Positions 1,346-55,610 of a stretch of DNA of 64,000 bases are shown one piece after another. Every line of letters begins with the position of its first letter. The first letter of the stretch is position 1. Position numbers and translations under genes: made by a program. The stretch is from Takakia lepidozioides. Lineage: Eukaryota > Plantae > Bryophyta. The notes under the pieces were generated by a model. The model searched no databases, was not told where the DNA came from, and worked only from the letters and a program-made list of their open reading frames with translations. Where the stretch lies: positions 60,326,001 to 60,390,000 of the forward strand of contig CM060732.1 of the NCBI GenBank assembly GCA_030704615.1, in the 5' to 3' direction.

Positions 1346-1402
1346 CTGCTCATCCCGGCGGCTTAGAGGTTCTTTTTTTTCCACAATTGTCTTTGTTTTT
1401 GC

Positions 1403-3343
1403 ATGCCAAACGCATCTGCAAGTTCTTGGTTGCGATCTGGTAGACAGAGGTTCATGTCTGGTTTGCAAGAGCCACTCGGGCCGCCTGGCAGAGGCATGCC
1501 TGATATCAGTGGGGAATCAGACAACCTCCAGGCAGGTAACGCCTTGACTGATGACGTTTCCTTGGACTCTGGTAATTTTGAGGAGGACTTAGAACTATTG
1601 CATGATGATGGTGTCGTGAGGATAGATAAGGAGGGCTCTGCTGTTTTGCCCATAGAATCGGGGGTGGCAAAAACCGCAATTCTTCCTACTCAGATTAGTG
1701 GGGCCATGGAGGTTCAAGGTAGTGAGCCCATGGTGCAATCTGGTCATGGACAAGGTAGAATCGGGTTGGTCTCAGACGCTAGGGCTATTGCGAGCAGTAT
1801 GCCGGCCCAGGTTGCTAACTTGAGTCCTAGTGTGTTGCCTGTTGTGAATTTCCCTAGTCCCACTCTCGGGGGAGAGAACTTGTTGCCTGCAAATTCAGGC
1901 ATGCATGTGGGCAGTTTTCCTGTGTTGAATGTGCATGGTGTTGTTCAAGGTGGGGATATCATGATGTAAGGGCCCTCTAGTGTGTCTACTGCTCCGACTC
2001 TTGCCATCACAGGTCAATCAGTGGGGGCCCTTTCTGCTCCACAGGCTGGGGTGCCACCACACCTTGTCTCTAGCTAGTCCATGGGTATACATGTTGGCAA
2101 TGTCCCTCCTAGTGGTCTCAGATCAGTGTCAACACAACCGGTGGGAGTGGCATCCACTCTTCCCATGAGTGGAATGCCACAAACCCACTTGCAGTCGACC
2201 TACCCTGCTGCTCAGCCAAATGTGGCAACACCTGCTCTCCCCATGGGCACGGTGGCGTCACATCTATCAGCTTCAACTGCTGTAGGATCAGCCAGCAATA
2301 ATAATATGGGTTATAATTATGCATCTAATATTGGATATGTGCATGGTAGTGCTGCTCCCATGATTCCCTGTTGCCTTGCTCATGGGTCTGGCCTCCCTGG
2401 TCACATTAACCATAGCCTGCCTTGTCATCTGATCCCTCAGCTGACTACTCAACCTTACCCAGAATATACCATGGGAGAAGACTTTGATAGATATCTTCAG
2501 ATGTTTGAGGTCATTGCTGGTGTCAATGGAGTGCCTGAGAATTTCAAAATGGTGATTTTTAGGATGAGCATGAAGGGACCAGCTCGTGACTTACTACATG
2601 CGGCTGTCATGGATGATCCCAGCCTCAACTGGACAACTCTGGTGGAATGGGAAAAGACCTTGTTCAAACCTCTTGAGAGGCCTTTGGATTGCTTTGCCAA
2701 GCTTTCTGCTAGGACTTACCAACCTGGGGAATCCTTGTGGAAGTATTACATGGATCTTAAATTTGCTGCTGTTGAAAATATCATAGACCCGGCAGAGAGG
2801 GATCGTATGGTTGAAAGGTATTTTCTCCTTGGGTTGCCTTCCACTATTCAGAATTGGGCTCAACGACGGCATTTTATCAATGACAAGACTATGTTAGCAG
2901 AAATTAATCTTAAAATGACAGACTTGGCTGACAGCAAATCAATGCAACATCATGCCAAGTTTCAAGCTCCAATGGGCTCAAAGCTTGGCATGTCTGCAAC
3001 ATCTTCACCCTATATTCCTCCTGCTATGACATGCAAAGCTGATGATTTTACTCTTCAGGGATTGGCTAATACTGTGGGAAGTCTTAGTGAGTATGTTGCC
3101 ACTCGGTTTGCTGCCATGCAGGCTCATCAACAGAGGTGGCAGCCTCGACATAGCCAAGGACCAATAGGTGGTAACAATAGAGGTCGAACCCAGATTGGGC
3201 AAGCTTATGAGGGTAATCGTGCTGCCTGTTACATTTGTGGATCATTTGAACACTCGACGAAGCATTGTCCAGACAGAGCAGGGCTACCAGAACTGATCAA
3301 GAACAAGAAGACAGCTAGTGGCTCTTCCCCTCCTTTAAACTGA
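1403..3343 (+). pseudogene. gag with long low-complexity N-terminus and two in-frame stops
   Basis: ORFs 1403-1969 and 2081-3343 share one frame, separated only by TAA (1967) and TAG (~2075). Capsid-like FDRYLQMFEVIAGVNG..MKGPA and a CCHC knuckle are present. Ends CCT TTA AAC TGA. Confidence 0.8.
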
Positions 3344-3434
3344 AAGATCTCTTGGAAAGGGGGCAAGAGGTCCATCATCTACCAACCCTTCTTCTGTTCC
3401 GATTCAAGCTATTTTATCTACTAACTTTAAAGCT

Positions 3435-3815
3435 TTGCATTGTCCTCTCAGTAGACAGACTGTTGGGCAGCAGATCAGTCCCCTCATGGCCCAGTGCCAT
3501 ATCCACGAGCTCAGTTTTCCCTGTGTGGTTGATACTGGATGCACTATATCTGCTATACCTTTAAGTGTTGTAAGAGTTCTTGGCCTTAAACTATGCCCTG
3601 CCATGGGTATTGAGGTGCTTATTGCAGATGGATCCAGGTATGAGCCCTTAGGACTAGTCAATGTTCCCATCAGAATTCATAAGAAAGAGGTTGTGGTGAC
3701 CTGCATAGTCACCATTGGAGATCAATTCCTTCTAGGCCTTGACTGGATGACTGGAGCTGGTGCCACCATCAGCTTAGCAGACTACACCCTTCTCTTTAAC
3801 AAGGGCATGAAGTAG
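3435..3815 (+). pseudogene. Retropepsin aspartic protease domain of pol
   Basis: FPCVVDTGCTISAI catalytic motif, IADG flap and FLLGLDW C-terminal motif. Confidence 0.9.
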
Positions 3816-4041
3816 TGGTTCCCTTGAAAGCAGTGAAGATCAAGGCTGGGTATGCCACAACCAATTTGTCCAGAGTCCAGGCCCTGGTCAAGGAGGTATA
3901 GCAGAACTCTCACTCCAACCTCAATTGGCATGATTTCTACAAGTATTAGCCTGATCTTCAACTTTTATATCAGTGGCATGATCCTGGTGCTAGAGATAGG
4001 ACAGGGGTGCCACCATAGCCATTCCAAAGAATTCTACTCTG

Positions 4042-4308
4042 ATTCGTGCACCTCTCAACATCACCATCCCCGCCTTGATCCAGAAGGTGGTCAAGTCTGG
4101 TCTGGCCTTCTTGTGTCCAGCTGCTCATTTCCTAGAAGTTGAAGGATGGAGGAAACTGACTGCCCTTAAGCATTGCCTGGTGGCCAATGGTGTTCTAGAT
4201 AGAGGATATCGGCAGGAAGTCAAGATTCTGATTGCTAATCCCGAGCGCTTCCCTGTGATTATCAAAAAGGGGCAGGTTCTGGCTTGCATCACTGCTCTTC
4301 CCATTGCT
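4042..4308 (+). pseudogene. dUTPase-like domain of pol with degenerate motifs
   Basis: Reads IRAPLNITIPP/QKVVKSGLAFLCPAAHFLEVEGWRKLTALKHCLVANGVLDRGYRQEVKILIANPERFPVIIKKGQVLACITALPIA (one frameshift). Follows the trimeric dUTPase pattern IPP..V.TGL..P / GVID.DYRGEI.V.L.N / I..GDRIAQ. Confidence 0.8.
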
Positions 4309-4529
4309 GACATACAAGAGGTGCAAGTTGGTTTTGGACTTGATGCCATTGGCATCCAACATGGCCCCTTAGATGAGGTTGTTGCTTTTGCTGCAGTTGC
4401 ACCACCACTTGTTCCTGATCTCAGCCTAGGAGGTAAGAAGGCCCTCACCAAAGTCTTATCTGAAATCAAGTTGGAAAGTGGAAATGCTTATTGCAAAGAA
4501 TCTAGATGTTTTCAATTTGGGATTCACTG

Positions 4530-5687
4530 ATTTAGGGCACACTCCTATTCTTCAACATGACATTGTCACTAAAGAAACAATTTGCTTACCGAGAGTATCA
4601 AGGAACGTGCTATAATCCAAGAAGAAGTCCAGAAAATGCTTGATGCTGGTGTGATTAAACCTTCAGTCTCCCGCTTCTGTGTTGACTTCAGGAAGTTGAA
4701 TGACATCACAAAAAAATATGCCTACCTTCTACCCAGGATTAATGAAACCTTGGATCAATTGCATGGTGCTACAATTTCCTCCTCTCTTGATCTTGCATCT
4801 GGCTTTTGGCAAGTTCCTCTTACTGAAGCAGCCAAGGAAAAGACCTCATTTGTGTGTCGCATGGGTAAGTACCAATATGAGACCATGCCTTTTGGTTTGT
4901 GCAATGCCACCTCTACATTCCAACGCCTCATGGACATTGTCTTGGGCAATCTTCGCTGGGAGTGTGCTTTAATTTATGTCGATGATATCAATGTTTACTC
5001 AGCCAGTTTTGATGCTCACTTAGCTGATCTCCAGCGTGTTTTCAGCAAATTGCGCACTGCAGGTCTCAAAGTAAAGCCCAAGAAGTGTGAGCTATTCATG
5101 CCTGAGTTGCTCTTCCTTGGTCATATTCTGTCCAAAGATGGTTTGCTTCCTGATCCTGCCAAACTTGAGTCTGTTTGGGGCTTTCCTATCCCCAGGGATA
5201 AACATTGTATCAAATCCTTCCTTGGTCTGGCTTCTTATTATAGGCGCTTCATAAAAAGTTTGCTCACCCTCTGACCAAGGTGTTGTGCAAAGATGCCAGG
5301 TTTGAATGGACCTTCTCCTAGCAAGCTGCCTTTGACACCCTTTGCAAGGCTTTGTGTTCAGCTCCCATCCTGATGTTTCCCAACTTTGAGTTACCTTTCT
5401 TGCTTCAGACTGATGCATCTGATGTTGCCGTCTCTGCAATCTTATGTCAAGTAGTAGAAGGCAAGGAGCATGTCATAGCTTATGCATCTCGTCGTCTAGA
5501 TCGTCATGAAAGGAATTATTCCATATCTGATAAGGAGGGTCTAGCCCTGGTCTTTGGTGTGAAGCATTTTAGGCAATATATTTACATGGCAGCCGGTTTG
5601 TGGTAGAGACTGATCATTTTCCACTAAAGGCTCTTGTTAAGCCAAGGGAACTTCATGGCAGACTTGCTAGATGGGCTATGTACCTGC
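4530..5687 (+). pseudogene. Reverse transcriptase and RNase H N-part of pol
   Basis: RFCVDFRKLN, SLDLASGFWQ, MPFGLCNA, YVDD, FLGH, LQTDAS, ERNYS and RLARWAMYL are present. The SPW.SP.V.V.KKDG segment before RFCVD is deleted; several frameshifts. Confidence 0.92.
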
Positions 5688-6239
5688 GCAGCATGTAGCT
5701 GATCATCCATGACTGCACTACACATAAGAGGTAGACAATGGATTTTAGAGAAGGTGGTCTGGAGTGTCTGCACCTATGATCTCCAGCCAGGGATACCTTC
5801 ACCTCATTTGTTACTACTCATGGACATCCAAATCAGGCCTTGAGGCTCAGGCCAATAGTCACACCGGAGTGCAGCAGCTGAATTACAACAAACTCGGGGG
5901 GCCTAGGAAAGAGAAGGGATAAAACACAACAAGGAACTTCCACCAAACCATCCGAATTCTCGCTAAGCGATAGATCCACCACACATACCAACACACGAAT
6001 AAATCAACCAGGCTCATCTAGCAGGCTAGACCAGCCCCAAGCAGAAAATATGCCATGTGAATCCAGGGCTAAGGGTTGCTGATCTGCACAAAGAAGGTTG
6101 AGAAGAGGGGCAGCATCAGCAGCAACCAGGTCATCCAATGTGAGCATAGGCCTGCTGACAGGAGGATCAACCCGTGTGAGTGCATCAGCATTTGTATTTT
6201 CCTTGCCCTTCTTGTAGACTATATCCATGTCAAATTGCC
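5688..6239 (-). other. Internal 552-bp inversion of pol (RNase H C-terminus plus linker to integrase)
   Basis: The minus strand encodes QFDMDIVYKKGKENTNADALTR. Re-inverting 5688-6239 restores RLARWAMYL-RQFDMDIVYKKG at the left junction and SWMISYML-QSGRSPTGL at the right junction, both in frame. Confidence 0.88.
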
Positions 6240-7484
6240 AATCAGGGCGTTCGCCAACTGGCCTTTCCGAGTCCTTGCATAAACAAATTCTCTATCATGT
6301 GTCTATTCACCGTTTTATGGGTGATAAGCTTTTCAAGGAGTTCAATAGAGGGGGAGTGTCATGCTACTTGGAGGTGCTACCACGGAGCCAGTTGAATGCT
6401 TTATTGGAGCGTTTCCATTGTTCCTTGTATGCGGGTCACCTTGGTATCAAGAAAACTGTGGCCCGCATCCAAGAGGTATACTATTGGCTGGGAATTCACG
6501 GAGTCGTCACCGAGTTCATCTCTAAGTGTGAAGGTTGTCGTGCTAACATTGCTCTCCCTAGGGCCCGGATCTTGTATGAGCTGCAGCCTTTGCCTGTCAC
6601 CCATGCTTTTGCTCGTGTTGGCATTGACTTGGTAGGACCCCTCGCACTCACGTCAAAGGGTCGAAGCTACCTTTGTGTTGCTACCGACTACTTGACTAAG
6701 TGGGTAGAAGTCCGGCCTTTGCGTTCCAAGGCTAGTGATGCTGTAATCAGTTCTTCTTCAATGGGATCCTTATGCAGCATGGGGTGTCCTCGGGAGATAC
6801 TCACGGATCAGGGCAAGGAGTTTTGTAACCAACTCCTCACAGTGGTTTGCTTCAACTTCGGTGTCAAATGCCCCATACCATCCCCAGACCAATGGCCTTA
6901 CGGAACGCTTCAACCAAACTCTTTGCCGCATGTTGGAGAAGAATGGCACACTTACCAGGGAGTGGGGTACCTTTCTTCCTCCTATTCTCTTTGCTTATCG
7001 CACCGTTGTGCATGCTAGCACCAAAACTCCTTTTGAGTTATTGTATGGTCGCAAGTGTGTTTCTCATTTGCATTCTACCTCTCTTATCTCTACTGTTGCT
7101 GATCCGGTTGATCTTGATACCTTTGTTGAGGATCTTCATGCTCGCCATGCGGTGTTTATCCATGATGCCAAGACGAACATTGGTAAGGCTCAACTAACCC
7201 AGGCCCGTACTTTTAACAAGCGCGTCAAGTATTCTAACCTGTTTCAGGTGGGACAGACTGTGTGCGTTCGATTACAACATGGCAAGCATGCATGCAAATC
7301 TAAGCTCAAGATTGACGGTCCCTACTTGATCTATCAGATTTTACGTGGGCGACGTGCTCTTCTTCTTCCCCAAGGCTCTAATACTGAAGTGCGGGATGAA
7401 CCTGTTTCCTTGACAGACTTGGTGCATTCTGAGCTTGTTTTTTATCTTACATGTATCAATGTGGAAGGGCGCACGGTGGGGTGA
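6240..7484 (+). pseudogene. Integrase of the gypsy element, no chromodomain
   Basis: HHCC (FH..AGHLG..CEGC), D-D-E core (IDLVG, TDQG, YHPQTNGLTERFN), TPFELLYGR and GPY motif; two frameshifts. Confidence 0.92.
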
Positions 7485-7788
7485 TATCTTGATCTTCTTA
7501 GCAATCTACTTCAGCTAATCCACTTAGCGGCTTAGTCTTAGTTTGTGGATGATGACTCTTGGGGTCCTCGGGCTTGCCCTCTCTAGGACCTAGAACATTT
7601 CTATGACATCTCACCATTTGTACTCCCTGCACGGTTTTCCTAGCCAAGGGTTTTGTCCTCGGCCCAACTTGCAGGTGCTAGGTTTTCCCTTGGTAGGTTT
7701 TTCACCCAACGGTGGAGGGTGATATTGTCCCCTTATTTGTTTTCCTTCGTGGAGCTCAAGATTTTTCTTGGGGGGTAGGCTTCATAGA

Positions 7789-10658: not shown

Positions 10659-10660
10659 CT

Positions 10661-10672
10661 TGGTATCAGAGC
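10661..10672 (+). promoter_or_regulatory. Primer binding site complementary to initiator tRNA-Met
   Basis: TGGTATCAGAGC two bases after the 5' LTR. Confidence 0.95.
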
Positions 10673-10713
10673 TTAGAGTTCAGTACGCAATCGTCCTTGG
10701 GATTGGCCTCATC

Positions 10714-13700
10714 ATGGGGTCGGGCAAGCCAAAGCAAAAGCGGAACGGCCCAAAAGATGATGATCCTGGTGAGCCCAATGGGGGCGATGTGTCACCGAGG
10801 CGGCCGTTTGAGGAAGCAATGCATGTTTCCGAAAACGAGGCCGCTCAAGAGTGGGAGGAATCTGAGGAGTCGGAGCCTGAGGAATCCCTGAGAGCTCCGA
10901 CCGACCAACAGATGCCGTCCATGCCAGCAGCCTTTTGGGAAGGGTTATTGGCGCAATTTGGCGGGACGTTGAAAGACATGTTGAAGGCGGCTAATGCCAC
11001 TTCCACTAAGGCAAAGTTTAAGGTGAAGCCTAAGGAACCCGACACCTTTGAGGGTGTCCGAAATCGGAAGGCACTCAACACCTGGCTCTTGGAGCTAGAG
11101 CAGTACTTCCGGGCGGCCAAGTTGAGTGATGAGGATCGGGTGGAAGTGGCTCCCACCTATTTGAGGGGCTATGCTCAACAATGATGGCATAAACGCCTTC
11201 ATGACCGAGGTCCAAGCCCGGAAATCTTGAACTGGAGTGGGTTCAAGGAATTGATGAAGAGGCAGTTTGTGCCCCTCAACGCGTCCTGGCTCGCCCGGGA
11301 CAAGATGAGGAATTTGAAGCAAACAGATGATATTCGGGGATATGTCCAAGCTTTCAATGTGTTGTTGCTTGAAGTCGCGGACATGGCAGAACCAGAAATG
11401 GCCTTCAACTTTGTGGCAGGACTGGCCCCATGGGCCAGGCGGAAGTTGGAGGAGAAGCCACCTAAGACTTTGAACGAGGCAATTGAGAGGGCTGAATGTT
11501 TCTCGGATGTCCCTAAGGGTGAAAGACAAGGCCGTACGGAGCTGAACCACAAGAAGACCCGGCGGGAAGGTGACTCCTTCCGACCGGAAAAGAAGTGGGA
11601 TAGGCCACGCAGTGACAATGGCACGTGGAAATCGAAGGGAGGGCCTTCACAAATCAAGGCGGCACCCGGTGCTTTGAAAGGAAAAGCGGGTGGAGCGGCC
11701 TATGGCGGACAGAAGACGACCTTTGATGGAGTGTGTTTCAATTGCGGGGAGCCCGGGCACATGGCCAAGAAGTGCACGAAGCCCCGACAATTGAACATGA
11801 CTTGGGCAACCACAGAGCTGTCGGAAGATACCATCAGTCGCTTGGTGGAAGCGGTGGTCGCCAGGACTTACAAGGTATGCAAATTTTCTTGTGAGTTGTA
11901 TCAGGAAACTGGCGCCTTACGTAAAGGGAGTCAGTTATTGTTCGTGGATGGGATAATATCCGGGACTAACGTGTCGTTGTTGGTGGACACAGGAGCGTCG
12001 CATTCCTTCATGACACCGGCAACGGCACAAAAGCTGGGACACCCGACAAGTGACGTGGGGGCCTCTATTGAGGTGCATTCTGCCAAAGGAGAACCGCAAT
12101 TGGTGACAAGGTTGGCGTTTGATGTTCCTCTTCAACTGGGGAGTTGGGAGGGACGTGAGAATTTCACCATCTGTGAGATCGATGGAGTAGATCTCATTTT
12201 GGGGATGACCTTTTTGAGCAAATCCGGAGCGGTCATAGATGGCCGCAAGAGAGTAGTCACGCTGCCATGTGGGAATGGTGGCGAGGTCTTACGAGTGTCG
12301 AAAACGCCCAAACCCGTGGGAGGGCGAATAAACCTTCTGTCAGCAAGGGAGTGGGCCGTGGAGGAGGCACACGAGCCCCAGTTTTTGCTCTACATTAGAG
12401 AAGTGAAGGGAGAAGGCGATGGGGAGCCGAGCCCAAATTGGATCAAGGGGATTTTGGAGAAATACCAGGATGTGATGCCGGAAGATTTACCAAGCGGCTT
12501 GCCACCGCGAAGAGGAGTTGACCACAAGATTGAGGTGATACCGGGATCGGAACCGCCTGCCAAGGCGCCCTACCGGTTGAGCCACAGAGAGTTGGTCGAG
12601 CTGAAGACTCAACTCAAAAATCTAATGTCAAAGGGGTACATCCGGCCGAGTAAGTCACCTTACGGAGCCCCGGTGCTATTCACAGACAAGAAGGATGGGA
12701 CGCTGCGGATGTGTGTCGATTACAGGGCTTTGAATAAGGTGACTATCAAAAACCGGTACCCTTTGCCAAGGATCGACGACCTTTTCGATCGGTTGGCAGG
12801 AGCGAAGTATTTCAGCTGGATCAATCTGCGCTCCGGCTATCATCAAATTCGAGTGGCGGAAGGAGATGAGGAGAAGACCGCGTGCAGGACAAGGTATGGT
12901 TCATATGACTTCTTGGTGATGCCTTTTGGACTCACCAACGCTCCCGCGACCTTTAGCACGCTGATGAACAACCTTTTCCAGGAGTGGTTGGATGACTTTG
13001 TGATTGTGTACATCGACGACATCTTGGTGTATTCGAAAACAAAGGAGGAGCACCTGGAGCACCTTAAAAGGGTGTTCCAGAAATTGCGGGAAGGGAAGCT
13101 GTATGCCAAAGCTTCAAAGTGTGAATTCGGGGTCACAAAAGTGGAGTTCCTGGGGCATGTGATCACACAAGATGGGATCAGAATGGATGACAGGAAGTTG
13201 AGGGCAATCTTGGACTGGGAGCCTCCGTCTTCGGTCCCGGGAGTGCGATCCTTCCTAGGACTCGCCTCCTATTACCAGAAGTATGTGAGAAATTTTGCTA
13301 AGATCGCGGGGCCGCTGTCAGACCTTCTGTGTAAATCCAAAGTCTGGACATGGAACACATTTTGTGGCCAAGCTTTTGCTGAATTGAAGCAGCGGATGGC
13401 GGAAGCTCCAGTCTTGAAAATCCCGGAGTTCGATCGTCCGTTCGAGATTCATACAGATGCGTCGGACTTCGCGATTGGGGGTGTACTGATGCAAGATGGA
13501 CGTCCAGTGGCTTACGAAAGTAAGAAACTGAATGAAGTGGAGCGACGGTGGCCGACGAACGAGAAAGAGATGAAGGTGGTGGTGCACTGTCTTGAGCTTT
13601 GGCGCCACTATGTTGGTTCCAACCCAGTGAAGGTGTTCACGGACAATGTCACGGTGAAGTATTTTGCCACGCAGCCCAAGTTGTCCCCAAACAACTTAGG

Positions 13701-15269
13701 TGGCAAGATACTTTGGCGGTGTTCGACGTGGATATCCAGTACAAACCGGGACGGGACAACGTGGTGGCCGATGCTTTAAGTAGAAAACATCAGCTCTTGT
13801 TGGTGTACAGGGGCGAGACGGCGTTCCAAAGGAAGATCCGGAAGGCTTGCTGGAAGGATGAGCTGGCGAAGTCCGTGATGCAGGACTTGAGGATGGGGGT
13901 TAAATCGCAGTTCCACTTGCAAAATGGACTGCTCCGGTATAAGCAAAAGCGTCTCTACGTGCCGAAGGGAGGGATCAGAGATAGCCTCTTGAGAGAATGC
14001 CATGATAGCCCGCTTGCGGGCCACGACGGAGCCAAGCGCACTGCGGCACTCTTGAAGAAAGAGTATTTCTGGCCCAAACTGAGGGAGGAGGCAGAGGAGT
14101 ATGTCAAGACATGCACCACATGCCAACAAAACCGGAGCGAGTACAAAAAGCAAGCGGGGCTGTTACAACCCTTGCCGATTCCAGAGGGGACTTGGGAAAG
14201 CGTCTCGATGGATTTCATGACTGCTATGCCGCTGTCAAAAGGATTCGATGCAATCATGGTGATGGTGGATAGGTTCAGTAAAATGGGCCATTTCATCCCC
14301 ACCAAGGAGACGGCAACGGCGCAGGAAACAAGGCGACTTTACTTCGTCCACGTCTTAAAGCATCATGGAGTCCCGAAGGATATTGTCTCGGACCGCGATC
14401 CAAAGTTTACGAGTAAATTTTGGAGGGCACTTTGGAAGAAGATGGGGACGAGGCTGAAGATGAGCACCGCCTTCCGACCGACGGCCAAACGGAAAGAGTG
14501 ACTTCCGTAGTGAAGCAGATCTTGCGGAATTACGTGTCGGTAGACCAAACAGACTGGGTGGAACACTTAGACGCGGCAGAGTTCTGTTATAATAACACAG
14601 AACACTCCGCAATGGGAGTTTCCCCTTTCGTATTGGTCTATGGAAAAGCACCTCTGGTGCCGACAAGTTGGGCCGCCCAGGACGTTGAGAAACCGGCAGT
14701 AGCGGCGGTACTGGAAGAACGCGAGCGTTTAGTTGAAGCTCGCAAAGTACAACATTGCCAAAGCTAGGAAACGGTATGAAAGGCAGGTGAATCGGAAGCG
14801 GAGGGAAGTGAAGTTTGAGGCAGGTACGGAGGTCTGGTTGAACATCAAGAATTTTCGACTACCTCCGGAAGTGAGTCCAAAGTTCGTACCTCCATATGCG
14901 GGACCCTTTCGCATCCGGAAGGTTATGAATGAGGATGTGTATGAATTGGAGCTGCCGGCAAACAGCAAGATGCATCCAATATTCCACGTCTCCCTTTTGA
15001 AGCCTTACTTCAAATATGAAGCGCGTCCGAATCGGCATCAAGTGTTGCGTCCGCCACCTGTGCTGTTGGATCATGAAAATGAACCTGAGTATGAGGTGGA
15101 GGCAGTACTTAAGTCGAGGAGGTTCAAGAACCGAGAAACGGAGTATCTCGTCAAATGGAAGGGCTATCATCATGTGGAGGCATCTTGGGTGCGTGCCTCA
15201 GAAATGGGAAACGCATCCGAGGCGGTTGCAGTTTTCGAAGGGCGATCCCAAAAACGGAAGAAGCGTTGA
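10714..15269 (+). pseudogene. gag-pol polyprotein with C-terminal chromodomain; one stop and three frameshifts
   Basis: [28 protein letters not shown], integrase HHCC/DDE and chromodomain EYEVEAVLKSR..EYLVKWKGY..SW. TGA at 11182 (likely from TGG); frameshifts near 13690, 14480 and 14745. Confidence 0.95.
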
Positions 15270-16159
15270 TGGGGACATCAACCTTGGAGCGTGGGGGAGG
15301 AAATGCATGCTTAGCCCGGCTTAGCTAGCTTAGGAATCCGATTGCAAAAACTTGTATTGTACAAAAATTTGTTATAAAGGAAATGGGTTCCAAATGTTGT
15401 GCGTCCTATTTTGTTTGGAATGGTAATGCATGGTGTGGTTGGCTAGTGTGTAGAATGCATGCTAGCTTACAAAAGTGGGAGAGGTAAATTGGGTTAATCG
15501 TGTCGCAGTGCCGAAATTGGGTGACTCCCATCCAAGGGGCAAGGAAACTTGCGCCTTCCTTAGGAGTTGCGCACCTGGCGCCTGCGCATACTATAATTGC
15601 GCTACCGAGGGGGTTGCTTTGTAGTGCGGGCTAACGCGGAAGCTACGTGCTTCCGTTCACGTACTATAATCGTGTAGCCTCGGGACGAAGTCGTAGTGCG
15701 GCTTCGGCGTGTTCCCGTACCTCAGGCCAGCATTCCAAGGCGGACCCAATTGTAGTGATTGGGGCGCGCGGTTGGTTCAAGGTTATCTTCCTAGTCAAAG
15801 AGGGTTCGAGGTGAACCCTTGCTCAAGGTGATGCCAAAAGCGGCATCATGAGCGGTCACAAGCAATGTTGTTGCAGTAAGGCGATTCGATCCTCGGGGAG
15901 GATCGTTCCTTGGCCTTGAAGTAGGCCAAGAAGAGTGCACTGGATGAGCTTGAGAAGCTCCACCCTTGGCCGGGACTTGGAGGAAGTCGGCCGAACTAGC
16001 TAGTGGAGAGTAGAGTCAAGTGTGGGGTTTGGTTTTTTTGCCATGGGACGCCATGGTACGGAAACAAACTCCTTGACGTGGGACGCCACAACTTGGATGT
16101 TCGTTTCCACAAAATGGACAAGCCGATGAGGACATCGACTCCCTGTTGGTAGGGGTGTG

Positions 16160-44488: not shown

Positions 44489-44898
44489 CTAGAGAAGGGG
44501 CCGTGTTTGGCCGATTCTAGCGGCCTTTGGGCGAGCCCTATGGCCGCGCACAGGGCAGAGTCGGCCAAACACGGCCCGTTCACTCGCGTTACAAGCAGGT
44601 GTGGCGGATTCTCGCCGCTACGTGGCGCAATATGATTGCGGTTCAATTATCCCATAATGATTGCCCAGATTCAGAGCCCTGGAGAGGATATAATCGGGAC
44701 CAGCCTCAGGGAAGGCGGGAGGGTTGATGGCTGACGACATGGGGCTCGGTGGTTAGGTCTGCCGTCCTCTGTGCCTAATCGGCCATCCCTGCCGATTCTG
44801 CCCTGGGTGACCGATTCGGCCTGAGAATTAGGCCGAAAAAGTGGCAGAATTTGCCACACGTGCTTTTTAACGATGTATGAAGTAGTAATCATGTATGA
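44489..44898 (-). mobile_element. Small non-autonomous Helitron (~410 bp) upstream of PP4R3
   Basis: On the minus strand it begins A|TCATACAT..TAAAAAGCACG and ends CTAG|T. A GC-rich hairpin (GGGCCGTGTTTGGCCGA / TCGGCCAAACACGGCCC, 44498-44578) lies just before CTAG. No TSD. Confidence 0.72.
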
Positions 44899-45680: not shown

Positions 45681-48021
45681 GCGCCCCACTGCTTTCCATT
45701 TGTGGAGGCTGCCCCTGTTCTGCCGATATTATCACCTCTTGCCGCAAGTTGGGTATAACATCTGCATGAATGACTTCCTTGGATAATTGATCTCTCAAAT
45801 TCAAGGCTTAGGGTTTATGGGATGTACACCTGAAATCTTGTATAATTAACTTTCTGCAAGCTCCATTGGACGTTTGGCTAGTTCCGAACATACCGATCAT
45901 CATTGGATATCAAGCAGTTCTGGCAAAATGAGGTACCCAAGACCTACCACCTCATGTTGACTCCCCATTTCCCACTGTTATGCAACTTTCCGATGTTGAA
46001 TGAATTATATACATTGATGTAGAATTAATCTCCAAGTGTTTTTACCAACAGTGCAGCAATACGCAAGGGATACTAACAAAGCACGAGAGAAAGGAGAGAG
46101 AAGAAAGAAAGAAATGGCAGAAAGTAGAGCAAGAAATGTCACTCCGAGAAGACGTGCCTTGTGCATATAGGCTGCCAGGCACTTCTAGTCCTAAAAGCTG
46201 AAGGCTTCTCCCATTCAAGAAATTTCTTACGCCCACGGAAGGCCCAGAGATCATTACACACATAACAAAGATGGAAAAGAAACAAAAAATAGGGTTGAGA
46301 CTTCAGACCTGATTTCTGAGTCCCTCCTCGAAAATGTGAAATAATTTGGTCTGTTGCAAGTGACCGGTTTCCATTTCAACCAGTAAGTGGTACTGAACAA
46401 CATACATATCCTCCGATACAGATACAAACATACAAACATATATACAGACACTGCTTGACACAATTGCTGGAGTTGATATTACACACCCTGCAATCCGCCA
46501 CAGTAGAAGATTTGCACGGACTCACCGAAAGGACAGTATAGATCAACACACACAATAATAACTTGGACAAAATAGAAACCTAGGTCTTGCGGGTCTTCAG
46601 CTTGTTGTGTAGCCCAGCAGTTGAAGCACTCCACACATAGAGGGATGCTTTGCAAATCCAAGCCATATCGTCTATATTCTTGAGTAGACCGCCCTGATTT
46701 GGAGGGTTTCAGATATAACTTGGAACGAAGGTCAAACTTCGCAGTGGCATTGGACCACTCCCAGCCCATTACAAGTGTAGAGAAGGTAAAAAGCAACACA
46801 AAGGCTGACCATATCAACAACCACAGGAGGATCAATAAGGAAGCTACTTACTATGATGGCCTCGCACCGTCGCTCAAGTCTTCCTGCCAAGCGTTCTTCC
46901 CTTTTCTCCTTTAAGAAGTCCAAAGGCCAGGCTTCCCACACAAACTGTACATATGACACTCCTCTCTGCTCCCAGGGGCAAGACGACGAAGGCCAAGGTT
47001 TTGCTAACATGAGAGTAGGGAAGAAAGGGAAGAAGCTTTCAGTGGTCTCCAACCATTTCGTTACTGGTTAAGAATATATTTCACAAAAACAAAAACAAAT
47101 ACAAATTAATATTTGATGCTCATTAATATCAAAAGCAATGTTAACTAGTGAAGGTATATATGTGAAGTTTGGGTGTTTTCCGGTGTAGGTATATCAGGAT
47201 CTTCCCCCATTTTGGCACTGATGTGTGGTCTCCTCTTGAGGGAGGAGCCAATAAACTGAGAAATCTACCAGTGACGACATTTTGATGACTTGAAGTGCAC
47301 AAGTTGAGGTAGTGCACATAGATTGCATGTACCTAGTCTCTTCGGCTTGTTGGGTGAAGTACACATATACAAATGTGAAAAGCGAGAAACTGTACACTCG
47401 ACATGGGGGATGATACTCTTTCACACACTTATCCCCGCAAACTTCTCTACAATGTACAAAGAGTAAGCCTCGAATAGATGCTCGTGGTAAAAAAAATGCT
47501 TAACAGCCGTGTTTTGAACTACCATTACATACATGTGGATGCCTCTCAGCACTCAGCCCTGCTGCAATGAGATGCCTGCAACCAACAATCATCATAATGT
47601 TTTTGGTAAGAAATAGGAGAGAGAAAATGTACTAGTAGACATTGTTTGTTGTAGTCTATTAGTAGAGAAAGAGAGACAGAATATACTCATAAGATGTTGT
47701 TTGCCGTGGCCTTGTGGTCATTGAGAAAGAGAGAGGGAGAGAGTCTTTATACCTGAGAGCATAGTCTCCGCAAGCCCACTCTAAGGTTTGTAGTTTGTAC
47801 CAGTGTGGAAACTAACCCCAAAATTGCCACTGCCAACATACAGGTACTTGAGTGTTGATGTCCATATTCAGTGACTTTGTGTTTATGTGTGAGAGAGAAG
47901 AGAGATGCAAGACACTGATTATTTCCATTGGATTTTACATACCTATGGGACACAGTGGGACTACAAGATACTACCAAAGGGCAAAATGGAGACCCCAAAT
48001 GCTGCCCAACGATGTAGAGCC

Positions 48022-51000
48022 TTATGCAGGATGGCCTGACACCGCAGAGAGAGAGAGGGACATGCAAACCTTCTTCAGTTCAACAGGATTTTTCTGGGAA
48101 GAAAGGGAAGTGTACCCTCTAGGAGACGAGAGCTTACCAAAACTGAGCACTGGTGCCATATGCCTAACCCCCTCATGCTGGTCAGTGGTTTTGTCATCGT
48201 GGGTTTCAACAACTGTGGCAACTGTTAGCCCCGTCAACGGGCCATTGCCTCTATCACCCTCAGGCTCATCAAATCCATCCAGTTCTGTATCATTAAAAGT
48301 GAGGCGGCCAGGCACAGAGCCTCGGGGCAACTGCACAGGGATGTCAAGGTCAATCCCTGTTTCCCTGCGCCGATGCTGGGGCGGGTCCATGAGCTCAACT
48401 GCATTAAGCTGTTGAGAGCTTGTGTCATACGGACCGATATTGAGAGCGCGAACAATAAATTTGGTGGGGTCTGCCAGGCTCAAGGGAGGGGGACGATCCA
48501 GTGGCTTGTCAACCACACCGTCTGGGGAGCCTTTTGACAGCCCAACCTGCAGTTGCCTTTCATTCGGTCAGAGATGATTGCCAAGCAACAAGGAAAAAGC
48601 TACGGGGGTGAGAAGAGAGGACACCGATGATTCTATGCATTCATACAAATACTCAGGATTCATGCCGAAGTTGCCATGGAGCCCAAATTGCTTAGCCACA
48701 ATCAACGCAATGGATTCAGAGATTTTAGCAACAGTATCTCTCTCCCATCTATGAGTACACAAGGTAGCAGAAAAAGATAGGATGTCCTGTCTCCCCTTCT
48801 TGCATATACAGTTCCTATCCTCATGACATGTACTAACCCTGTAGATTGCGTTCAACCAACTCCAAAAGATGTGAACAAGGTGGCAGGGAACTAGGAAGAC
48901 GTGACAATCCAGTCATCTCTGATGTGTTAGAAACATTTTTGTAGAATTGGAGCTTTGGTGAGCTGGTGAATCTGGTGCCCTAGTCTTTTCAGTGAACCGG
49001 GTCCTTCACTTGGCCTGGAGCAACACTATTAGAGCTGTCCAAGCCAAAAGGGTCTGGCTCTGCAGAGATGCCGATATGCGGACTTTCCAAACACATATAG
49101 ACCTTAGGAGTTCGATTTCATTTGGACCATCCAAAATCTCACTTGAATTCATGTTGGGACAGGGTTGCTTAAGTGCCAACTGCAGCCCCCTTTCATTTGA
49201 TCGTATTAGGCTGGGGGGACTGGTCGCCCCCCTCCCCTCTTTGTACTCTGGTGTTCTGAAATGAATTGGCATCTCGACTTTCAAAACAACAGAAAACAGG
49301 CAAATCTTTTGCAGTACCTGAGCTAGCTCATTTAGTCTCAGCATACATATTAGTTCAGCATCCATCAAGTTACTAATGCATTTAATTTGATAATATAATA
49401 AAGTACAGACCCTTCTAACCTGACCTGGTTCATTGAAGAAAGCCCGCTGCTCCCCTTGTCTCCATTGAGATGAGGCGACGACTCCGAATGGGCTCCGCCA
49501 CTGCCACTAGTGCTGGTGGGCTCACCACCAGAGAGCCTGGCAAGCTTTGCGTACCGTTGGATTGACCGCCGCTCTCTCCGTATAAGATCAGCCTCCTCTT
49601 GCCTCAGTTTCGCAAGCTCTTTCTGTGCTTTAGCAACATCTGCTCTTACTTGATCCGCTGTGGCGAAATCCCGGTCCTGAAACCAGCAAGCACATTTCTG
49701 GCCTCAAAACTTTATACAGCAAGATGACATCAAAATGTTATGTGGGTATTGGTAACTTAGTCGTATTGATAACTTAGTCATTATGACCTTCAGTTCCAAA
49801 AACCAAATCCAATAAAACAAAGCCACTTGATCCGGGGCCAAAGAGTGCCAAGGCATAATGGAGAAATAGCCAGCCAGAGCAGCAGTTTTGGTGACAATAT
49901 TTAGGCTAAGAAAATAAGAAATAAGAGAGAAGGACGGAATCGAATGAGCAGTAAAACATAGAAGAACTTGAATTGAAAAAAGGTTTCAATGGTAGATATA
50001 GTAGATGTAGAAAATATGAACCCCATCATTTGCAAGACCAGGCTTTGACTGCATGTTCATTTTCTGGTTACCTCAGTCCCCACCTTTTCTGAGCCAAAAT
50101 TCCCAGCAAACCCAGAGTGCAAGAAAGGAGACCTGTTCTTCCACACGCTTGAGGCTCTCTTCCTTCTGGCGGATGTGCTGCTCAGCCAGCAGTATATCAT
50201 TCTTCAGTTCCTCACGCCGTTCCATTCGGGTGTCAGCATTCCACTTCTTCGTCTCCAAGTTTCGCTTACGCACTAGCGCCCTTGGCCTAGGTTCTGCATG
50301 CTGCAACATAGAGAGGCCACCACATGTTCAAATGCATTGACAACTACTCAGTATCAACCTTAGCATTTGAAATTGAAAACTCTTAATGTCTCAATTTACA
50401 TCAAACAAAGAATGAGACCAACCTGGGAGCGTGAATATCCATGCTTGAAGGAGTAGGTCTTCCGAATCTGGAAAAGGCATGGGTGTCCATATCAGTAGCA
50501 GTAAGGTCTACCATTTCGAGGATGGGGAGGTCTAACCCTGGGCCGTGAGTAGCCATGCTTGAACAGTTAGGTCTTCTGAACCTACCCACCAGCATTGTCT
50601 TTCCCTCTTTGAGACAGGTTCTATACTACACCATTCTAGCCCATAGGAGTATAAACAGCACCTGTATACCAAAAAGGTTAAAATGCTCCACCACGACGAA
50701 TGGGTCAGAAATCCAAAATGTTCCTGTGATTGGGCAGATATCAACTAGTGACATTACATGGTGACAACTACGACATACAGATTATAATCAGTAAGAATTC
50801 CGTCAAATCGACTGACAAATGCATGACAGTAATCAAGAGGGTCAGAAAGTGACCGGGTAGCATCCAAATTGCAGTCCATAGATTGACTGAGATACATTGC
50901 AACTGCAGACGACCCTCTGACTTGCTTACAGATCAACTGGTGGTAAGTAGCAGGAGAGGAAGGGGAAGAAAGGACAAAGACATGTTGATTCCAGCTATAC

Positions 51001-52141
51001 TCTAGATCCCTATTGGACAAACATACGAGATCTGATGTTGTTGCAGTTCCGTCACACCGTCGAGCAACTATACCAAGAATGTTGCCTACCATGTTTGCAG
51101 CTTCTCTCATGAGATCAGCACGGCGCCCCTTCTCCACCAAACAAGGGTCCCGGAGAGCAATCTGGAGAGCTGCCTCATTCATGAGCTTCATGTGCCCTGT
51201 CAGCACTCCATTTTTCCCTTTGGAATATATACGTGCCCGCCTCTCCAGATCTCCTCTGAGAGTGTTGTCAGTCAAAGTCTCGGTAGGGGATGGGACATTT
51301 GCTGAGACTGGCTCTGTTGAAACCCAATGCACCTCTTTGTTAGACCCAAAGTAGACTTTTCCATAGTTGTTATTCCAAGAAAAGCTCCAAGAAAACCACA
51401 AAAAAAAGACTGTCATTTTCAAATGAAAGACATTTTCAATCTGTCACCTGAACATCTTGGCATGTCCAATGCTTTAGCTCAATCTGATAACATCTCAAAG
51501 TGTGGGGAGTTGCTTCATTACTGGAATAAGAAGTTAAGTCTAATGTTCAGCCTAATAAAGTTGATGTACACCAACCTGTCCGATTGAAGTTTTGCAAAAA
51601 GGGTGTCTCTGACAGGGGTGGGCTTTTGCTATCGCGCTCCAAATCTCTTTCCAATATGAGAGTGACTGGTTGTACATCTTGTCCTTCTAGCCCAACCATA
51701 GTCATGTTACACTGGAGAAGTGAAAACGAAACTGGGAGCTATGAACAACACCAGTTAGATATCATAAATATTCAGCATGTACATTTGAGAGAAAACAACA
51801 TCCCATGAAACCTTACCCCGTTCAACTGGATTGTCAGCACGAATGCGCAAGCTGGTAATTGACTTGGGGTCAAAAAGTTCCAGATCTTCCACCTCGGCCC
51901 ACAATTCATCTACCAAATGTGCCGCCTGCCCAGGGGCAGCATCCCCAACCTTCATCTCTAGCACAATGTGAGCTGCTTCTTTAGCCAAGACGAGTTTTGC
52001 CTTGATTTTGCCACGCAGATCATCAAAAGACTCGACTGCTGGAATGTAGACCATTTTCCGCTTCAGGCCCACCATCGGCCCCGGCATCAGCAACAATTTG
52101 TAGGAGTTTCCAGCTGCCCCGCCCATTTTATGTTTCTCCAT
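48022..52141 (-). CDS. Uncharacterised spliced gene: N-terminal beta-grasp-like domain, NAB NCD2-like domain, coiled coil and disordered tail
   Basis: Phase-consistent exons 52141-51817, 51686-51576, 51313-51090, 50467-50423, 50300-50133 and 49676-49425 (or 49420). These give LERRARIYSKGKNGVLTGHMKLMNEAALQIALRDPCLVEKGRRADLMREAANM|IRKTYSFKHGYSRSQ|HAEPRP..EEQ|DRDFATADQVRADVAKAQKELAKLRQEEADLIRRERRS. The 3' exons (~49256-49100, 48546-48069/48022) and stop are uncertain. Confidence 0.72.
50537..50581 (-). pseudogene. Degenerate tandem duplicate of the 45-nt exon 50467-50423
   Basis: AG|VQKT*LFKHGYSRPR|GT versus the open copy AG|IRKTYSFKHGYSRSQ|GT. Same length; TAC>TAA stop. Confidence 0.8.
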
Positions 52142-54135
52142 CTCTTCCCTCACGCAAGTTTCTCCAACACCCTCAGTGCCCAACGTGCATCAACACCTGT
52201 GCTCCTACACTAATCTTCCATGATCTGTTTCCATAGCCGACTCGACGATTTTCTCTACGGTGTACAATCCTTTCACTTTCGCCATACAACTCTTCCAAAT
52301 TACAGCCACACTATCTACTAGGCAATGCCATCCGATTCTCCCATCGCCGCATGCAATTGACCTGTACAGAAAACGCCAAAAATTACACTTTGTCTTACAG
52401 AAAGGGATACCGACCCTGCCGCCGGGGCAGAGGTTTTCGAACAAACAGAGTACGAAACACAGCCCAAATTGATACCAACACAACTACCATTGGCGCACAA
52501 CGGAATACTCCTGTAAAACAGTAGAGTTAGAAGCAACCTGAGTAGTCTCTCGCAAAGAGAGAGGGAGAGAAATGAAGGAGATGGAGCTAGAGCGCACTAC
52601 CTTGAGCTCAAAAGCATATCGTTCACGTAATCTTCAATGCTCAGCTGATTGAGACTGGCTTGCATTGCAAACCCTTCATTCAATTCTGCAAGCTTCACCC
52701 GAAATCTCCACCCAATAAGCTGCTAGGAGAACTGAAGGACGGCTGCAGAAACACAGAGAGCAGAATCCATCAAATTTGAAAGTTTTGTGGATTTATCACA
52801 AGACTTGGTGGGCGAGGTGACGTTGAAAGACTCCCGGCCCGGCAGCTGCTTTGTCCATTGCTTGCTCTGGGGTAGGGTTAGGGGAGCTGCCATCTCTCCC
52901 CTCCCCTCCTCCACCCTCACCCCTCCCCTCTCCCATGGGATGCACGCACACATCCATTCTCCAACTCGGATGAAGGACGCTCGGGGATGAACGTTCGACG
53001 ATTCAAGGATGAGAGGCGATAGGATGAAAGTAAACTGTAGCTCTGTCATCAATGTGAGTGTAGCAGTAACCTTTAGACTTCAGATGGTCTACTACTTGCC
53101 GTTGTATCACAGGCGATCAGGCAGGCTCTGGAGCTTCAAACTATCCCTGTTCAAATACATGATTCCTTGACCACCAAAGAGAAGGGTTACAAATCATACA
53201 AAGAGGCAACAAGCCTGTACTCATTAGGCTCAAAATTCAGCGAACACTGTCTCAGACTGCAAGTAAAGCGACAGTACCAATTGTCATCCAATTAAAAAAG
53301 AAATAGATGTATTTTTGCAAATGCAAAACCCATACTAACCTCCGCCAGTCTGACATTTAACTGTAGTTAGATGGACAAACAACCTGGAATATATACCTCC
53401 TCTCTTATTCAAAATTTACAGGGAAGGTCCTCAAAAGCTCGAGTTGACATTTTGATTGATAGTGTCTACATACACTCTGGGGCGAGAGTACAGCACTCTG
53501 GTCTGTAACAACATCCAGACACCTCAAAGGATTCTTAGCAACGCAAAAACTATTTACAGATCATCTGCAAGTATCAGTGCATTTACTGGAGGGCCTTCCG
53601 AGGGTGAGTGATTTCAAGTTCGCCATTAAGGGCCTGCCACACAACCAGATGCCAACACACTCAGTCATGACCCTCATACATGTAGCGTGCAGATGTATAG
53701 AGAGAGAGATGCACTTTTTCAAGTTATTTGTAGATATATGATCTGACAAACATTTGTCCACTAAACAGGATTCCTCTTCTCATAAGACAAGCAGGCCAAA
53801 GAAGCTATGATGCATAATGTGAACGGCAAGTATGGAGGGATCTGGTGAGGCGAACAACCCCCTTACATGCGGCATTTTCCATCGCCATTTGCCAAACTCT
53901 TGCCCAAGAAGCTTCCCATAAGGAAGAACTTGCATACAATCCAAGCAAGCTGACAACAAGCCATTCTGTTTCCTTCTGCTGGGCAGTTTCATTCTTTTCA
54001 AATGTTTGCTGGTGTGTTCCCGAACTCACTAATGAATAGGTCGAATTTGGATATTGTGAAAACCTCAGTGAGACTAGGGAAATTCCACTTTTGCTCAGGC
54101 TCAAATCCACTTCTAGGCTCATCAAACTAAGCTAA

Positions 54136-55610
54136 TCAAGACCAGGGTGTCATAATCCAGAAAGGAGGCTGTACCTTGGTCACCCATGAGGAAAGGCTCA
54201 TGCTGCTCGTACTCTCCCTCCCCTCTGCTGCTAGGTCATTGCAAGGAGGGGCAGACTCGAAAGAAGCCTTGGAGAGTCTCTTGGACAAGAAGCCAACCTC
54301 AAAGTAGATGTAGGGAGATTCAGGAACGTCCACATGGATACCAGTGACTGGCAGCCACACAAAATATTCCTTTGCTTGAATGCCAGACAGACTTTTGATT
54401 GCACCAAAAGCAATCTGTCCCTTGATAGTGTCATCATAATATACCTGCACAGGTTTCAAGCACAATCAGATAAAATTTCAGTAGTATCAAACAGTGAGCA
54501 AAGTTTTATCTGTTGCAGGTAACATCCTCAGCATATCACGTCTTCCAAGAACAGAGTAAGATGTGTCCTGCATTGTCACATGGACTGTCTTCAGGTCTTA
54601 AGGATGTGACAGCCCTCCTAATGTCTTTAAACTACGAGGAGCCGATTGCCAGCTCTATCTCAGCATCTGGTTAGATGACTAAATCAAGCAGAGGCCCTGA
54701 TAGCATCATAGCTTCACATCATCTACAACTAAATGCTTAATTGTACACCTAAAATCCATAACTGCTAAGACCTTTAGAGTTTCCAGTATGGACAGTGACT
54801 TCCAAGTCAGTGCAGTTGCCAGAGAATGGTATGAGCTTTAAATGAACGAAAAGCTGGTAGTCCGTTACTCACAACTGGACATATGCCAGGTTCTCTATCT
54901 GTTTTGTGCAAAATGCCAATAGCATATGCATCCCTTCCTGTGATTTTCGTAATTTCCTTTCAATTTTTTTCAGACGGCCATGGATGTTCAGGGAACATTT
55001 TTAGCGCACAAATCAACCTGGTTAGTTTTAATCTGTGATACTTCCTGTGCCGCATAGAGATTACGTTATTCTGAGGTCTTAGCACAAAGAGGACAAATGG
55101 AAGAAGCGCAATAGAAATGCAGCCATTATTAGATCCAAACAGAGAATATACGAAAAAGATCGCCAAATGGCATGGTTTAGGGTTTATGTACATGCATGAT
55201 ATCTGTGCGAGAACTCCCTTAATAGATTGACTGGCAGGAAAGAAGGTTTACGCTCAACAATTTCAGGAACAGGGAATGAAATTCTTCGATACGATGTACA
55301 TCAACATTAGCAGCCAAATTAAATGGATGATCGAAGACGCATGCGGTCTAAGGAACCACAAATCCTGAATTTCCGAACAAAGCAACACACAAATGAGAAA
55401 GGAGTAGTATACCTGATCCTCGAAATTTGCATAGCACGATTTGGTCAACTCCACCTCAAATTCCCCGTTCTTAGACAGGGAGTAACTCTTCACAGATGCG
55501 GGAAGCAAGCCGATCGGCAGGCCGTTGTCATCCAGGATGTCGTAAACGGAGGCATCCACCAGTGCCACAAGGAGCACCGCTACAGCGACAATTACCATCA
55601 TTCTCGCCAT
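54136..55610 (-). CDS. Secreted DUF538-family protein, 2 exons (55610-55413, 54444-54136), ~168 aa
   Basis: Hydrophobic signal peptide, then SVYDILDDNGLPIGLLPASVKSYSL..FEVEL..CY|VYYD..I.G.I..G.I..LSGIQAK..FVWLPVT.I.VD..IYFEVG.LSK..FE..P.C, the DUF538 pattern. Confidence 0.92.

What the first reader, a model, noticed from the sequence alone, without database searches (positions are those of the whole stretch)
49425..52141. Plant gene encoding an animal NAB-corepressor NCD2-like domain
Seen: the spliced product contains RARIYSKGKNGVLTGHMKLMNEAALQIALRDPCLVEKGRRADLMREAANMIRKTYSFK. Known: NCD2 of NAB1/NAB2 (NGFI-A-binding EGR corepressors, regarded as metazoan) reads approximately [61 protein letters not shown] (recalled from memory). 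The pattern IY...LT.H....NEAA.Q....D..L..RR..L...A is shared with matching spacing. Land plants have no described NAB/EGR system. The gene has ordinary GT-AG introns and open exons, so it looks like a resident nuclear gene. Inference: an undescribed plant NCD2-family protein, from ancient retention, horizontal transfer or domestication of a transposon accessory ORF.
Basis: partly seen in the sequence, partly recalled or inferred. Interest (0 to 1): 0.9.

Follow-up and report, generated by a model that had tools for sequence, protein, structure and literature searches.

The report
Plant relative of animal NAB domain
This moss-like plant has an intact, spliced gene, shared with the green algae closest to land plants, whose core is very probably a distant relative of a domain known almost only from animal NAB gene-regulator proteins, here built into a different protein that lacks the NAB partner-binding half.

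Summary
Confirmed. RNA contigs from two studies show every CDS junction of a - strand gene (384 aa main isoform, ATG 52141); the quoted peptide is exact. Orthologues exist in Chara braunii, Mesotaenium and Spirogloea (about 75% identical in the core; one intron position shared with Chara); all unnamed, and no paper found. NCD2 ranks first in four comparisons, none decisive alone: Pfam (E 0.053 for exon 4; 0.001, 19.6 bits, under the 25 cut-off, for the Mesotaenium orthologue), PDB sequence search (2YUF, E 0.086), ESM Atlas features (0.83), and a template-free model against 48,161 chains (2YUF, Z 6.2, rmsd 4.3, 27% identity). Homology to the C-terminal core of NCD2: about 0.85. It is not a NAB protein: NCD1 (SAM, EGR-binding) is absent, replaced by a conserved, probably beta-grasp (PB1/CIDE-N-like) domain; a basic patch and a coiled coil follow. 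No transposon, viral or prokaryotic link was found, and nothing suggests recent transfer. Best reading: an old streptophyte nuclear scaffold/co-regulator with an ancient eukaryotic NCD2 core, apparently missing from databased model land plants. Function untested. Not noted before in this scan.

The parts
52601..52794 (-). 5' UTR exon 1 (5' end approximate); a 73-codon uORF starts at 52665, crosses intron 1 and stops before the main ATG
   Evidence: contig joint 52359/52599, intron 52362-52600 GT-AG, uORFs
51817..52361 (-). exon 2; ATG at 52141; encodes aa 1-108
51836..52102 (-). conserved N-terminal domain (aa 14-102), probably beta-grasp (PB1/CIDE-N-like), with a basic strand and an invariant acidic stretch at 51869-51910
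   Evidence: 59-70% identical to algal orthologues; weak Pfam PB1 E 0.093 and CIDE-N E 0.087; ThiS/MoaD structure hit TM 0.51 by target; model pLDDT only 30-58
51576..51686 (-). exon 3, unconserved linker; alternative acceptors at 51686 and 51683 (one residue difference)
   Evidence: both joints seen in contigs; no significant match to orthologues
51090..51313 (-). exon 4; NCD2-like helical core starts at about 51260 (aa 164-220)
   Evidence: Pfam NCD2 E 0.053; 2yuf_A sole PDB hit; 72-77% identical to Chara, Spirogloea, Mesotaenium; donor site shared with Chara
50423..50467 (-). exon 5 (45 nt), end of the NCD2-like core with the invariant FKHGYSRS motif (aa 227-234)
   Evidence: in the Mesotaenium orthologue this motif raises the NCD2 score from 15.4 to 19.5 bits and extends the match to model position 123 of 125
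50537..50581 (-). degenerate tandem copy of exon 5 inside intron 4: 33/45 identical, AG and GT kept, in-frame TAA at codon 5; not used in the contigs
   Evidence: (family D4)
50133..50300 (-). exon 6: basic NLS-like patch (50244-50270) and first helix of the coiled coil
   Evidence: 43-50% identical to algal orthologues; basic residues conserved
49425..49676 (-). exon 7: second coiled-coil helix (to about 49533), then low-complexity tail
48022..48546 (-). alternative exon after exon 7 (open for 174 codons, 549-aa isoform if terminal; a donor-like site at 48137 would shorten it); 3' end unresolved
   Evidence: joint 48544/49423 in one run
47546..47575 (-). coding part of the last exon of the main 384-aa isoform; stop ends at 47546
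   Evidence: loose contig ends of both runs match 47545-47574

Best explanation
A vertically inherited streptophyte gene for a nuclear, self-associating scaffold or transcriptional co-regulator. Shown: the gene, its splicing, its conservation from Chara and zygnematophytes to this plant, and its three-part build (N-domain, helical core, basic patch plus coiled coil). Strongly indicated: the helical core is homologous to the C-terminal core of animal NAB NCD2. Inferred: the N-domain is a beta-grasp module that oligomerises head to tail through its basic and acidic faces (as PB1 and CIDE-N do) or docks a partner, so filling the role that the SAM-type NCD1 has in NAB; the basic patch takes the protein to the nucleus; the NCD2 core presents a conserved surface to a general, pan-eukaryotic chromatin or transcription factor; the coiled coil dimerises or recruits a further partner. 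It would be brought to DNA by other proteins rather than by EGR.
For: Splicing. Orthologues at E 1e-20 to 1e-22. Purifying selection: against Chara, exon 4 has 6 second-position against 41 third-position differences in 64 codons, and 30 of 51 identical residues use different codons. NCD2 first in Pfam, PDB sequence searches, Atlas features and structure (rank 1 of 48,161, Z 6.2, 74 aligned, 27% identity against at most 20% for all other listed rows). Three weak, concordant beta-grasp hints for the N-domain. Core plus patch is basic (23 K/R against 12 D/E). NCD2 is the transcription-regulating domain and NCD1 the EGR-binding one in NAB; Nab2 does not bind DNA (PMC2768752, PMC8230482).
Against: No NCD2 score reaches the Pfam cut-off; the Spirogloea and Chara domains get no Pfam hit alone. 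Foldseek on PDB and the Atlas shape search did not list 2YUF or NCD2. Z 6.2 with rmsd 4.3 is within what helical bundles reach by common arrangement and is under 1 Z above a sigma-factor domain. The four comparisons share the same sequences and are not fully independent. The N-domain model is low confidence. No localisation, partner or phenotype data; shared fold does not show shared function.
Confidence: 0.55

Rival explanations
1. The core is a true NCD2 homologue, but the protein is not a transcriptional co-regulator: NCD2 is a generic protein- or nucleic-acid-binding module and the plant protein is a cytoplasmic or RNA-associated polymerising adaptor.
For: All NAB-specific context (NCD1, EGR, CID) is missing; beta-grasp plus coiled coil is common in cytoplasmic adaptors (own knowledge); NAB1/2 are largely cytoplasmic in some cells (PMC12393881); the core is basic.
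Against: Conserved basic clusters directly behind the core look like a nuclear localisation signal; the only characterised relatives act in transcription.
Confidence: 0.28
2. The NCD2 likeness is convergence or chance between short helical bundles; the gene is a streptophyte-specific family unrelated to NAB.
For: Sub-threshold scores; Foldseek blank; unrelated PdxS and ABC-transporter chains score close to 2YUF in the PDB profile search (15.4 and 14.7 against 16.1 bits); rmsd 4.3.
Against: Pfam E 0.001 over 24,736 models; the same target is first by sequence and by a template-free model among 48,161 chains; the match is collinear over 55 residues up to the end of the model and gains score from a separate exon; PdxS and ABC chains do not appear in the structural list.
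Confidence: 0.12
3. The NCD2 core entered streptophytes by an ancient horizontal transfer from an opisthokont, or was domesticated from a transposon or virus, before Chara and land plants split.
For: Patchy range: found only in Chara, two zygnematophytes and this plant among 1.84 billion representatives; none in chlorophytes or protists at E 0.001.
Against: Low identity to animals (27%) against about 75% inside the family; no terminal repeats or transposase near the gene; ordinary neighbours DUF538 and PP4R3; no relatives in viral, prokaryotic or metagenome contigs. Single-sequence searches are too weak to exclude intermediates in other eukaryotes.
Confidence: 0.15

Closest known systems
NAB1/NAB2 (NGFI-A-binding) co-regulators, Drosophila Nab, C. 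elegans MAB-10; Pfam NCD2 PF04905; PDB 2YUF
   Same: C-terminal core of NCD2 (model positions 69-123 of 125), same predicted helical arrangement, 27% identity in the structural alignment; NCD2 lies behind an N-terminal interaction domain and before a variable tail.
   Different: No NCD1/SAM domain; the N-terminal ~65 model positions of NCD2 are not matched by sequence; a beta-grasp-like domain in front and a conserved coiled coil behind; no CID; scores under the family cut-off; host lineage has no described EGR/NAB system.
PB1 / CIDE-N beta-grasp oligomerisation domains (ARF and Aux/IAA, NLP, SOSEKI in plants; CIDE in animals)
   Same: About 90 residues, strand-strand-helix start, conserved lysine on the first strand and an invariant acidic stretch; weak Pfam and fold hints.
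   Different: All hits weak (E about 0.09, one member each); no known PB1 or CIDE-N protein is joined to an NCD2-like domain (own knowledge).
Unnamed algal proteins: Chara braunii GBG75005 (CBR_g19519), Mesotaenium ME000540S08420, Spirogloea SM000098S25117 / SM000130S27104 / SM000037S13559
   Same: Orthologues: same domain order, 59-77% identity in both domains, shared intron after the core in Chara.
   Different: Annotated as hypothetical; the Chara model reads through the shared donor site and so lacks the motif of exon 5 and the coiled coil; tails differ in length and sequence.

Membership tests
NAB family | N-terminal NCD1 (SAM-like) domain that binds EGR and multimerises | tested here: not met
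   No NCD1 hit at E up to 10 for any exon or orthologue; the N-domain has strands and beta-grasp hints instead
NAB family | NCD2 domain above the Pfam gathering score (25 bits), full length | tested here: not met
   Best 19.6 bits, model positions 71-123 only
NAB family | Binding to EGR-type zinc-finger factors; repression or co-activation | not testable with these tools
   needs bench assays
NCD2 fold/superfamily (remote homology) | Significant profile similarity to NCD2 | tested here: inconclusive
   First-ranked in every search; E 0.001 (Pfam, Mesotaenium), 0.053 (exon 4), 0.086 (PDB profile), Atlas 0.83 with 172 shared features; no hit for Spirogloea or Chara alone
NCD2 fold/superfamily (remote homology) | Same three-dimensional fold as 2YUF | tested here: met
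   Rank 1 of 48,161, Z 6.2, rmsd 4.3, 74 aligned, 27% identity, core pLDDT 68-81; moderate strength, and not found by Foldseek
NCD2 fold/superfamily (remote homology) | Profile-profile match and common clade with animal NCD2 | not testable with these tools
PB1/CIDE-N beta-grasp (N-domain) | Ubiquitin-like fold with basic and acidic faces | tested here: inconclusive
   PB1 E 0.093, CIDE-N E 0.087, ThiS TM 0.51 by target, ATG12 among weak Foldseek rows; pLDDT under 60; PDB profile search blank
Transposon accessory or domesticated gene | Terminal repeats, transposase linkage, copies in mobile elements or viruses | tested here: not met

The most novel reading that the evidence does not exclude
NCD2, treated as an animal co-regulator domain, is an ancient eukaryotic module that streptophytes kept in their own unrecognised co-regulator family, where a beta-grasp polymerising domain replaces the SAM domain; the residues shared across kingdoms mark the still unknown effector surface of NCD2 and point to a partner common to plants and animals.
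Probability: 0.45. Interest if true: 0.75.

Novelty: new variant of a known kind. Interest (0 to 1): 0.6.

Why it matters
NCD2 is called the repression or regulation domain of NAB proteins (myelination, worm maturation, the NAB2-STAT6 tumour fusion), but in the papers read here no binding partner is assigned to it. A well conserved relative in plants would push the domain back toward the last common ancestor of eukaryotes, and the few residues kept across that distance give a short list for mutagenesis and pull-downs. For plant biology it adds a conserved, unnamed streptophyte family, present in Chara and non-flagellate zygnematophytes and kept in this moss-like plant, but not found in the databased model land plants: a candidate ancestral regulator lost repeatedly on land. 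The limits are real: remote homology, four species, no function shown.

Tried and rejected
Word-based homologue search with the exon-4 region and with the domain alignment for short fragments: blank. Atlas features for exon 4 alone: blank. Single-sequence fold of exon 4: two long helices, pTM 0.28, not used. Foldseek on PDB and viral structures, Atlas shape search, and the second look at Foldseek's list: nothing significant; 2YUF was not among the listed rows. Metagenome, viral and prokaryotic genome scans: no relative. P0004 (Agrococcus repeat protein) rejected as a low-complexity artefact. PdxS, ABC transporter and Orc1 lid hits in PDB rejected as weaker and absent from the structural ranking. 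N-domain and core are not repeats of each other. NCBIfam: only a coiled-coil artefact. Cilium-linked retention rejected because Spirogloea and Mesotaenium lack flagella (own knowledge). Downstream Chara exons were not found within 10 kb of the donor. Literature searches for NCD2 with plant, PF04905, streptophyte, non-metazoan and the orthologues' accessions found no description; the two original NAB domain-mapping papers are not held. Animal NAB sequences had no reference id, so profile-profile comparison and a tree were left out.

Full report
Observation. The finding lies on the - strand in an ordinary gene-rich stretch, between a DUF538 gene upstream (54139-55610) and a PP4R3 gene further downstream; LTR elements are confined to the first 16 kb of the window. 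Contigs of two public runs from two studies lie on the exons at 99%+ identity and skip seven or eight GT-AG introns. The spliced frame opens at ATG 52141 and gives 384 aa when exon 7 joins 47575 (seen in both runs), or up to 549 aa when it joins 48546 (one run; 3' end unresolved). A NAGNAG acceptor adds or removes one residue in exon 3.

Host. Not given. Earlier notes call it a moss or moss-like plant. The scan has 5,084 windows of 64 kb (about 325 Mb) and this piece is longer than 54 Mb (offsets); a review lists Takakia lepidozioides at 325 Mb with an 83-Mb N50 (PMC13120521). Takakia is therefore a plausible host; this is inference, not tested.

Family. An exhaustive phmmer run of exon 4 over 1.84 billion representatives gave three real hits, at 75-77% identity: Chara braunii GBG75005, Spirogloea muscicola and Mesotaenium. 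A search with the Spirogloea protein over the 90% clusters (219-697 aa) added only another Spirogloea copy. All are unnamed. Exon by exon, the conserved parts are the N-domain (59-70%), the core (72-75%), exon 5 (67-73%) and the coiled coil (33-50%); exon 3 and the tails are not conserved. Chara has a GT donor at the same codon boundary as intron 4 here, and its gene model reads through it. Differences from Chara fall mostly on third positions (13/6/41 in the core, 25/13/45 in the N-domain), so the gene is under purifying selection and was inherited from the common ancestor of Chara, zygnematophytes and land plants. No Physcomitrium, Marchantia, fern or seed-plant protein appeared although NCBI and UniRef proteins are in the collection; loss in those lineages is likely but rests on absence in two searches with limits of length and clustering.

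Is the core NCD2? Pfam: NCD2 is the only family for exon 4 (14 bits, E 0.053). With the Mesotaenium orthologue, which supplies the exon-5 equivalent by reference, the score rises from 15.4 to 19.5-19.6 bits (E 0.001) and the match runs to model position 123 of 125; the cut-off is 25. Spirogloea and Chara alone give no hit. PDB sequences: 2YUF (human NAB1 NCD2) is first with the exon (E 1.3), the orthologue (E 0.33) and the family profile (E 0.086, 21 matching positions in about 57 columns), with unrelated chains close behind. ESM Atlas features: the one usable hit is an NCD2 cluster, 0.83, 172 shared features, which the tool rates as a lead only. Structure: a template-free AlphaFold2 model from eight plant and algal rows has a helical core at pLDDT 68-81; aligned to 48,161 representative chains, 2YUF is first (Z 6.2, rmsd 4.3, 74 residues, 27% identity), ahead of sigma-factor domains at Z 5.4 and below with 8-13% identity. 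Foldseek and the Atlas shape search, run on the half-disordered whole model, found nothing. No single result is decisive and they share inputs, but one target heading the sequence, feature and fold rankings is hard to get by chance. I put homology with the C-terminal core of NCD2 at about 0.85.

What else is in the protein. The N-domain (aa 14-102) is as conserved as the core. It has no SAM/NCD1 signal. Its weak hits all point to the ubiquitin-like beta-grasp: PB1 (E 0.093), CIDE-N (E 0.087), ThiS/MoaD (TM 0.51 by target), ATG12. It keeps a lysine on the first strand, a KRK motif and an invariant acidic run, the two-faced pattern of head-to-tail PB1 and CIDE-N polymers (own knowledge). The model there is poor, so this is a hypothesis. 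Behind the core come a conserved basic patch (aa 246-254) and about 80 residues with a heptad pattern (61% hydrophobic at a/d in the best register).

How it probably works. In NAB, NCD1 binds EGR and NCD2 regulates transcription, and Nab2 does not bind DNA (PMC2768752, PMC8230482); NAB proteins form homo- and heterodimers (PMC12393881). The plant protein has the second module but a different first one. The simplest reading is a nuclear adaptor that oligomerises or docks on a plant factor through the beta-grasp domain and uses the NCD2 core to engage a general, conserved partner (0.55). Rivals: true homologue with a non-transcriptional role (0.28); chance likeness (0.12). On origin, recent transfer from animals is excluded by age and divergence; transposon or viral origin has no support; an ancient eukaryotic domain with many losses fits best, helped by a published, unverified Pfam NCD2 hit in Rhizopus delemar (PMC4102429), though an old transfer cannot be excluded without a tree.

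Membership and novelty. It is not a NAB family member (NCD1 absent, NCD2 partial and sub-threshold). It is very probably a remote NCD2-fold protein in a new architecture. Rating: new variant of a known kind, interest 0.6.

Left out. The joined spliced protein was not sent to any search or fold tool; it was translated only in a local script to check the frame. Animal NAB sequences had no reference id and were not typed, so HHalign against NAB and a phylogeny were not done.

Noticed in passing
window 50537-50581 (-): Degenerate tandem copy of the 45-nt exon 5 inside intron 4, with AG and GT intact but an in-frame TAA; could act as a poison exon. Not used in the two runs' contigs.
   Followed up: partly
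window 52665-52208 (-), across intron 1: The 5' leader holds eleven upstream ATGs, among them a 73-codon uORF in the main frame that stops about 22 codons before the main ATG; possible translational control. No Pfam hit for its exon-2 part.
   Followed up: partly
window 48022-48546 (-): Alternative exon after exon 7, open for 174 codons; its first 75 residues align with the Spirogloea N-domain end and linker (1 of 1000 shuffles as good) but not with the other orthologues: chance or an old partial duplication.
   Followed up: partly
window 47746-47800 (-): Short stretch ending in a donor-like site between the two alternative last exons; possible further cassette exon, not covered by the reads laid.
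   Followed up: no
L001 49109 onward (Chara braunii): The Chara gene model GBG75005 reads through a canonical GTGAGT donor and is probably truncated by mis-annotation; its first intron is about 38 kb long, and the missing exons are not within 10 kb downstream.
   Followed up: partly
window 1400-7500 and 10660-15300 (+): Two Ty3/gypsy-type elements (gag zinc knuckle, protease, RT, RNase H, integrase; the second with a C-terminal chromodomain-like ORF), with frames broken.
   Followed up: no
window 48838 and 49280: One run shows 15- and 14-nt insertions in intron 7 relative to the assembly: allelic or population variation.
   Followed up: no
window 44491-44584: 28-nt inverted repeat, 89% complementary, 38-nt spacer, near short AT-rich tandem repeats; possible MITE or hairpin.
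   Followed up: no
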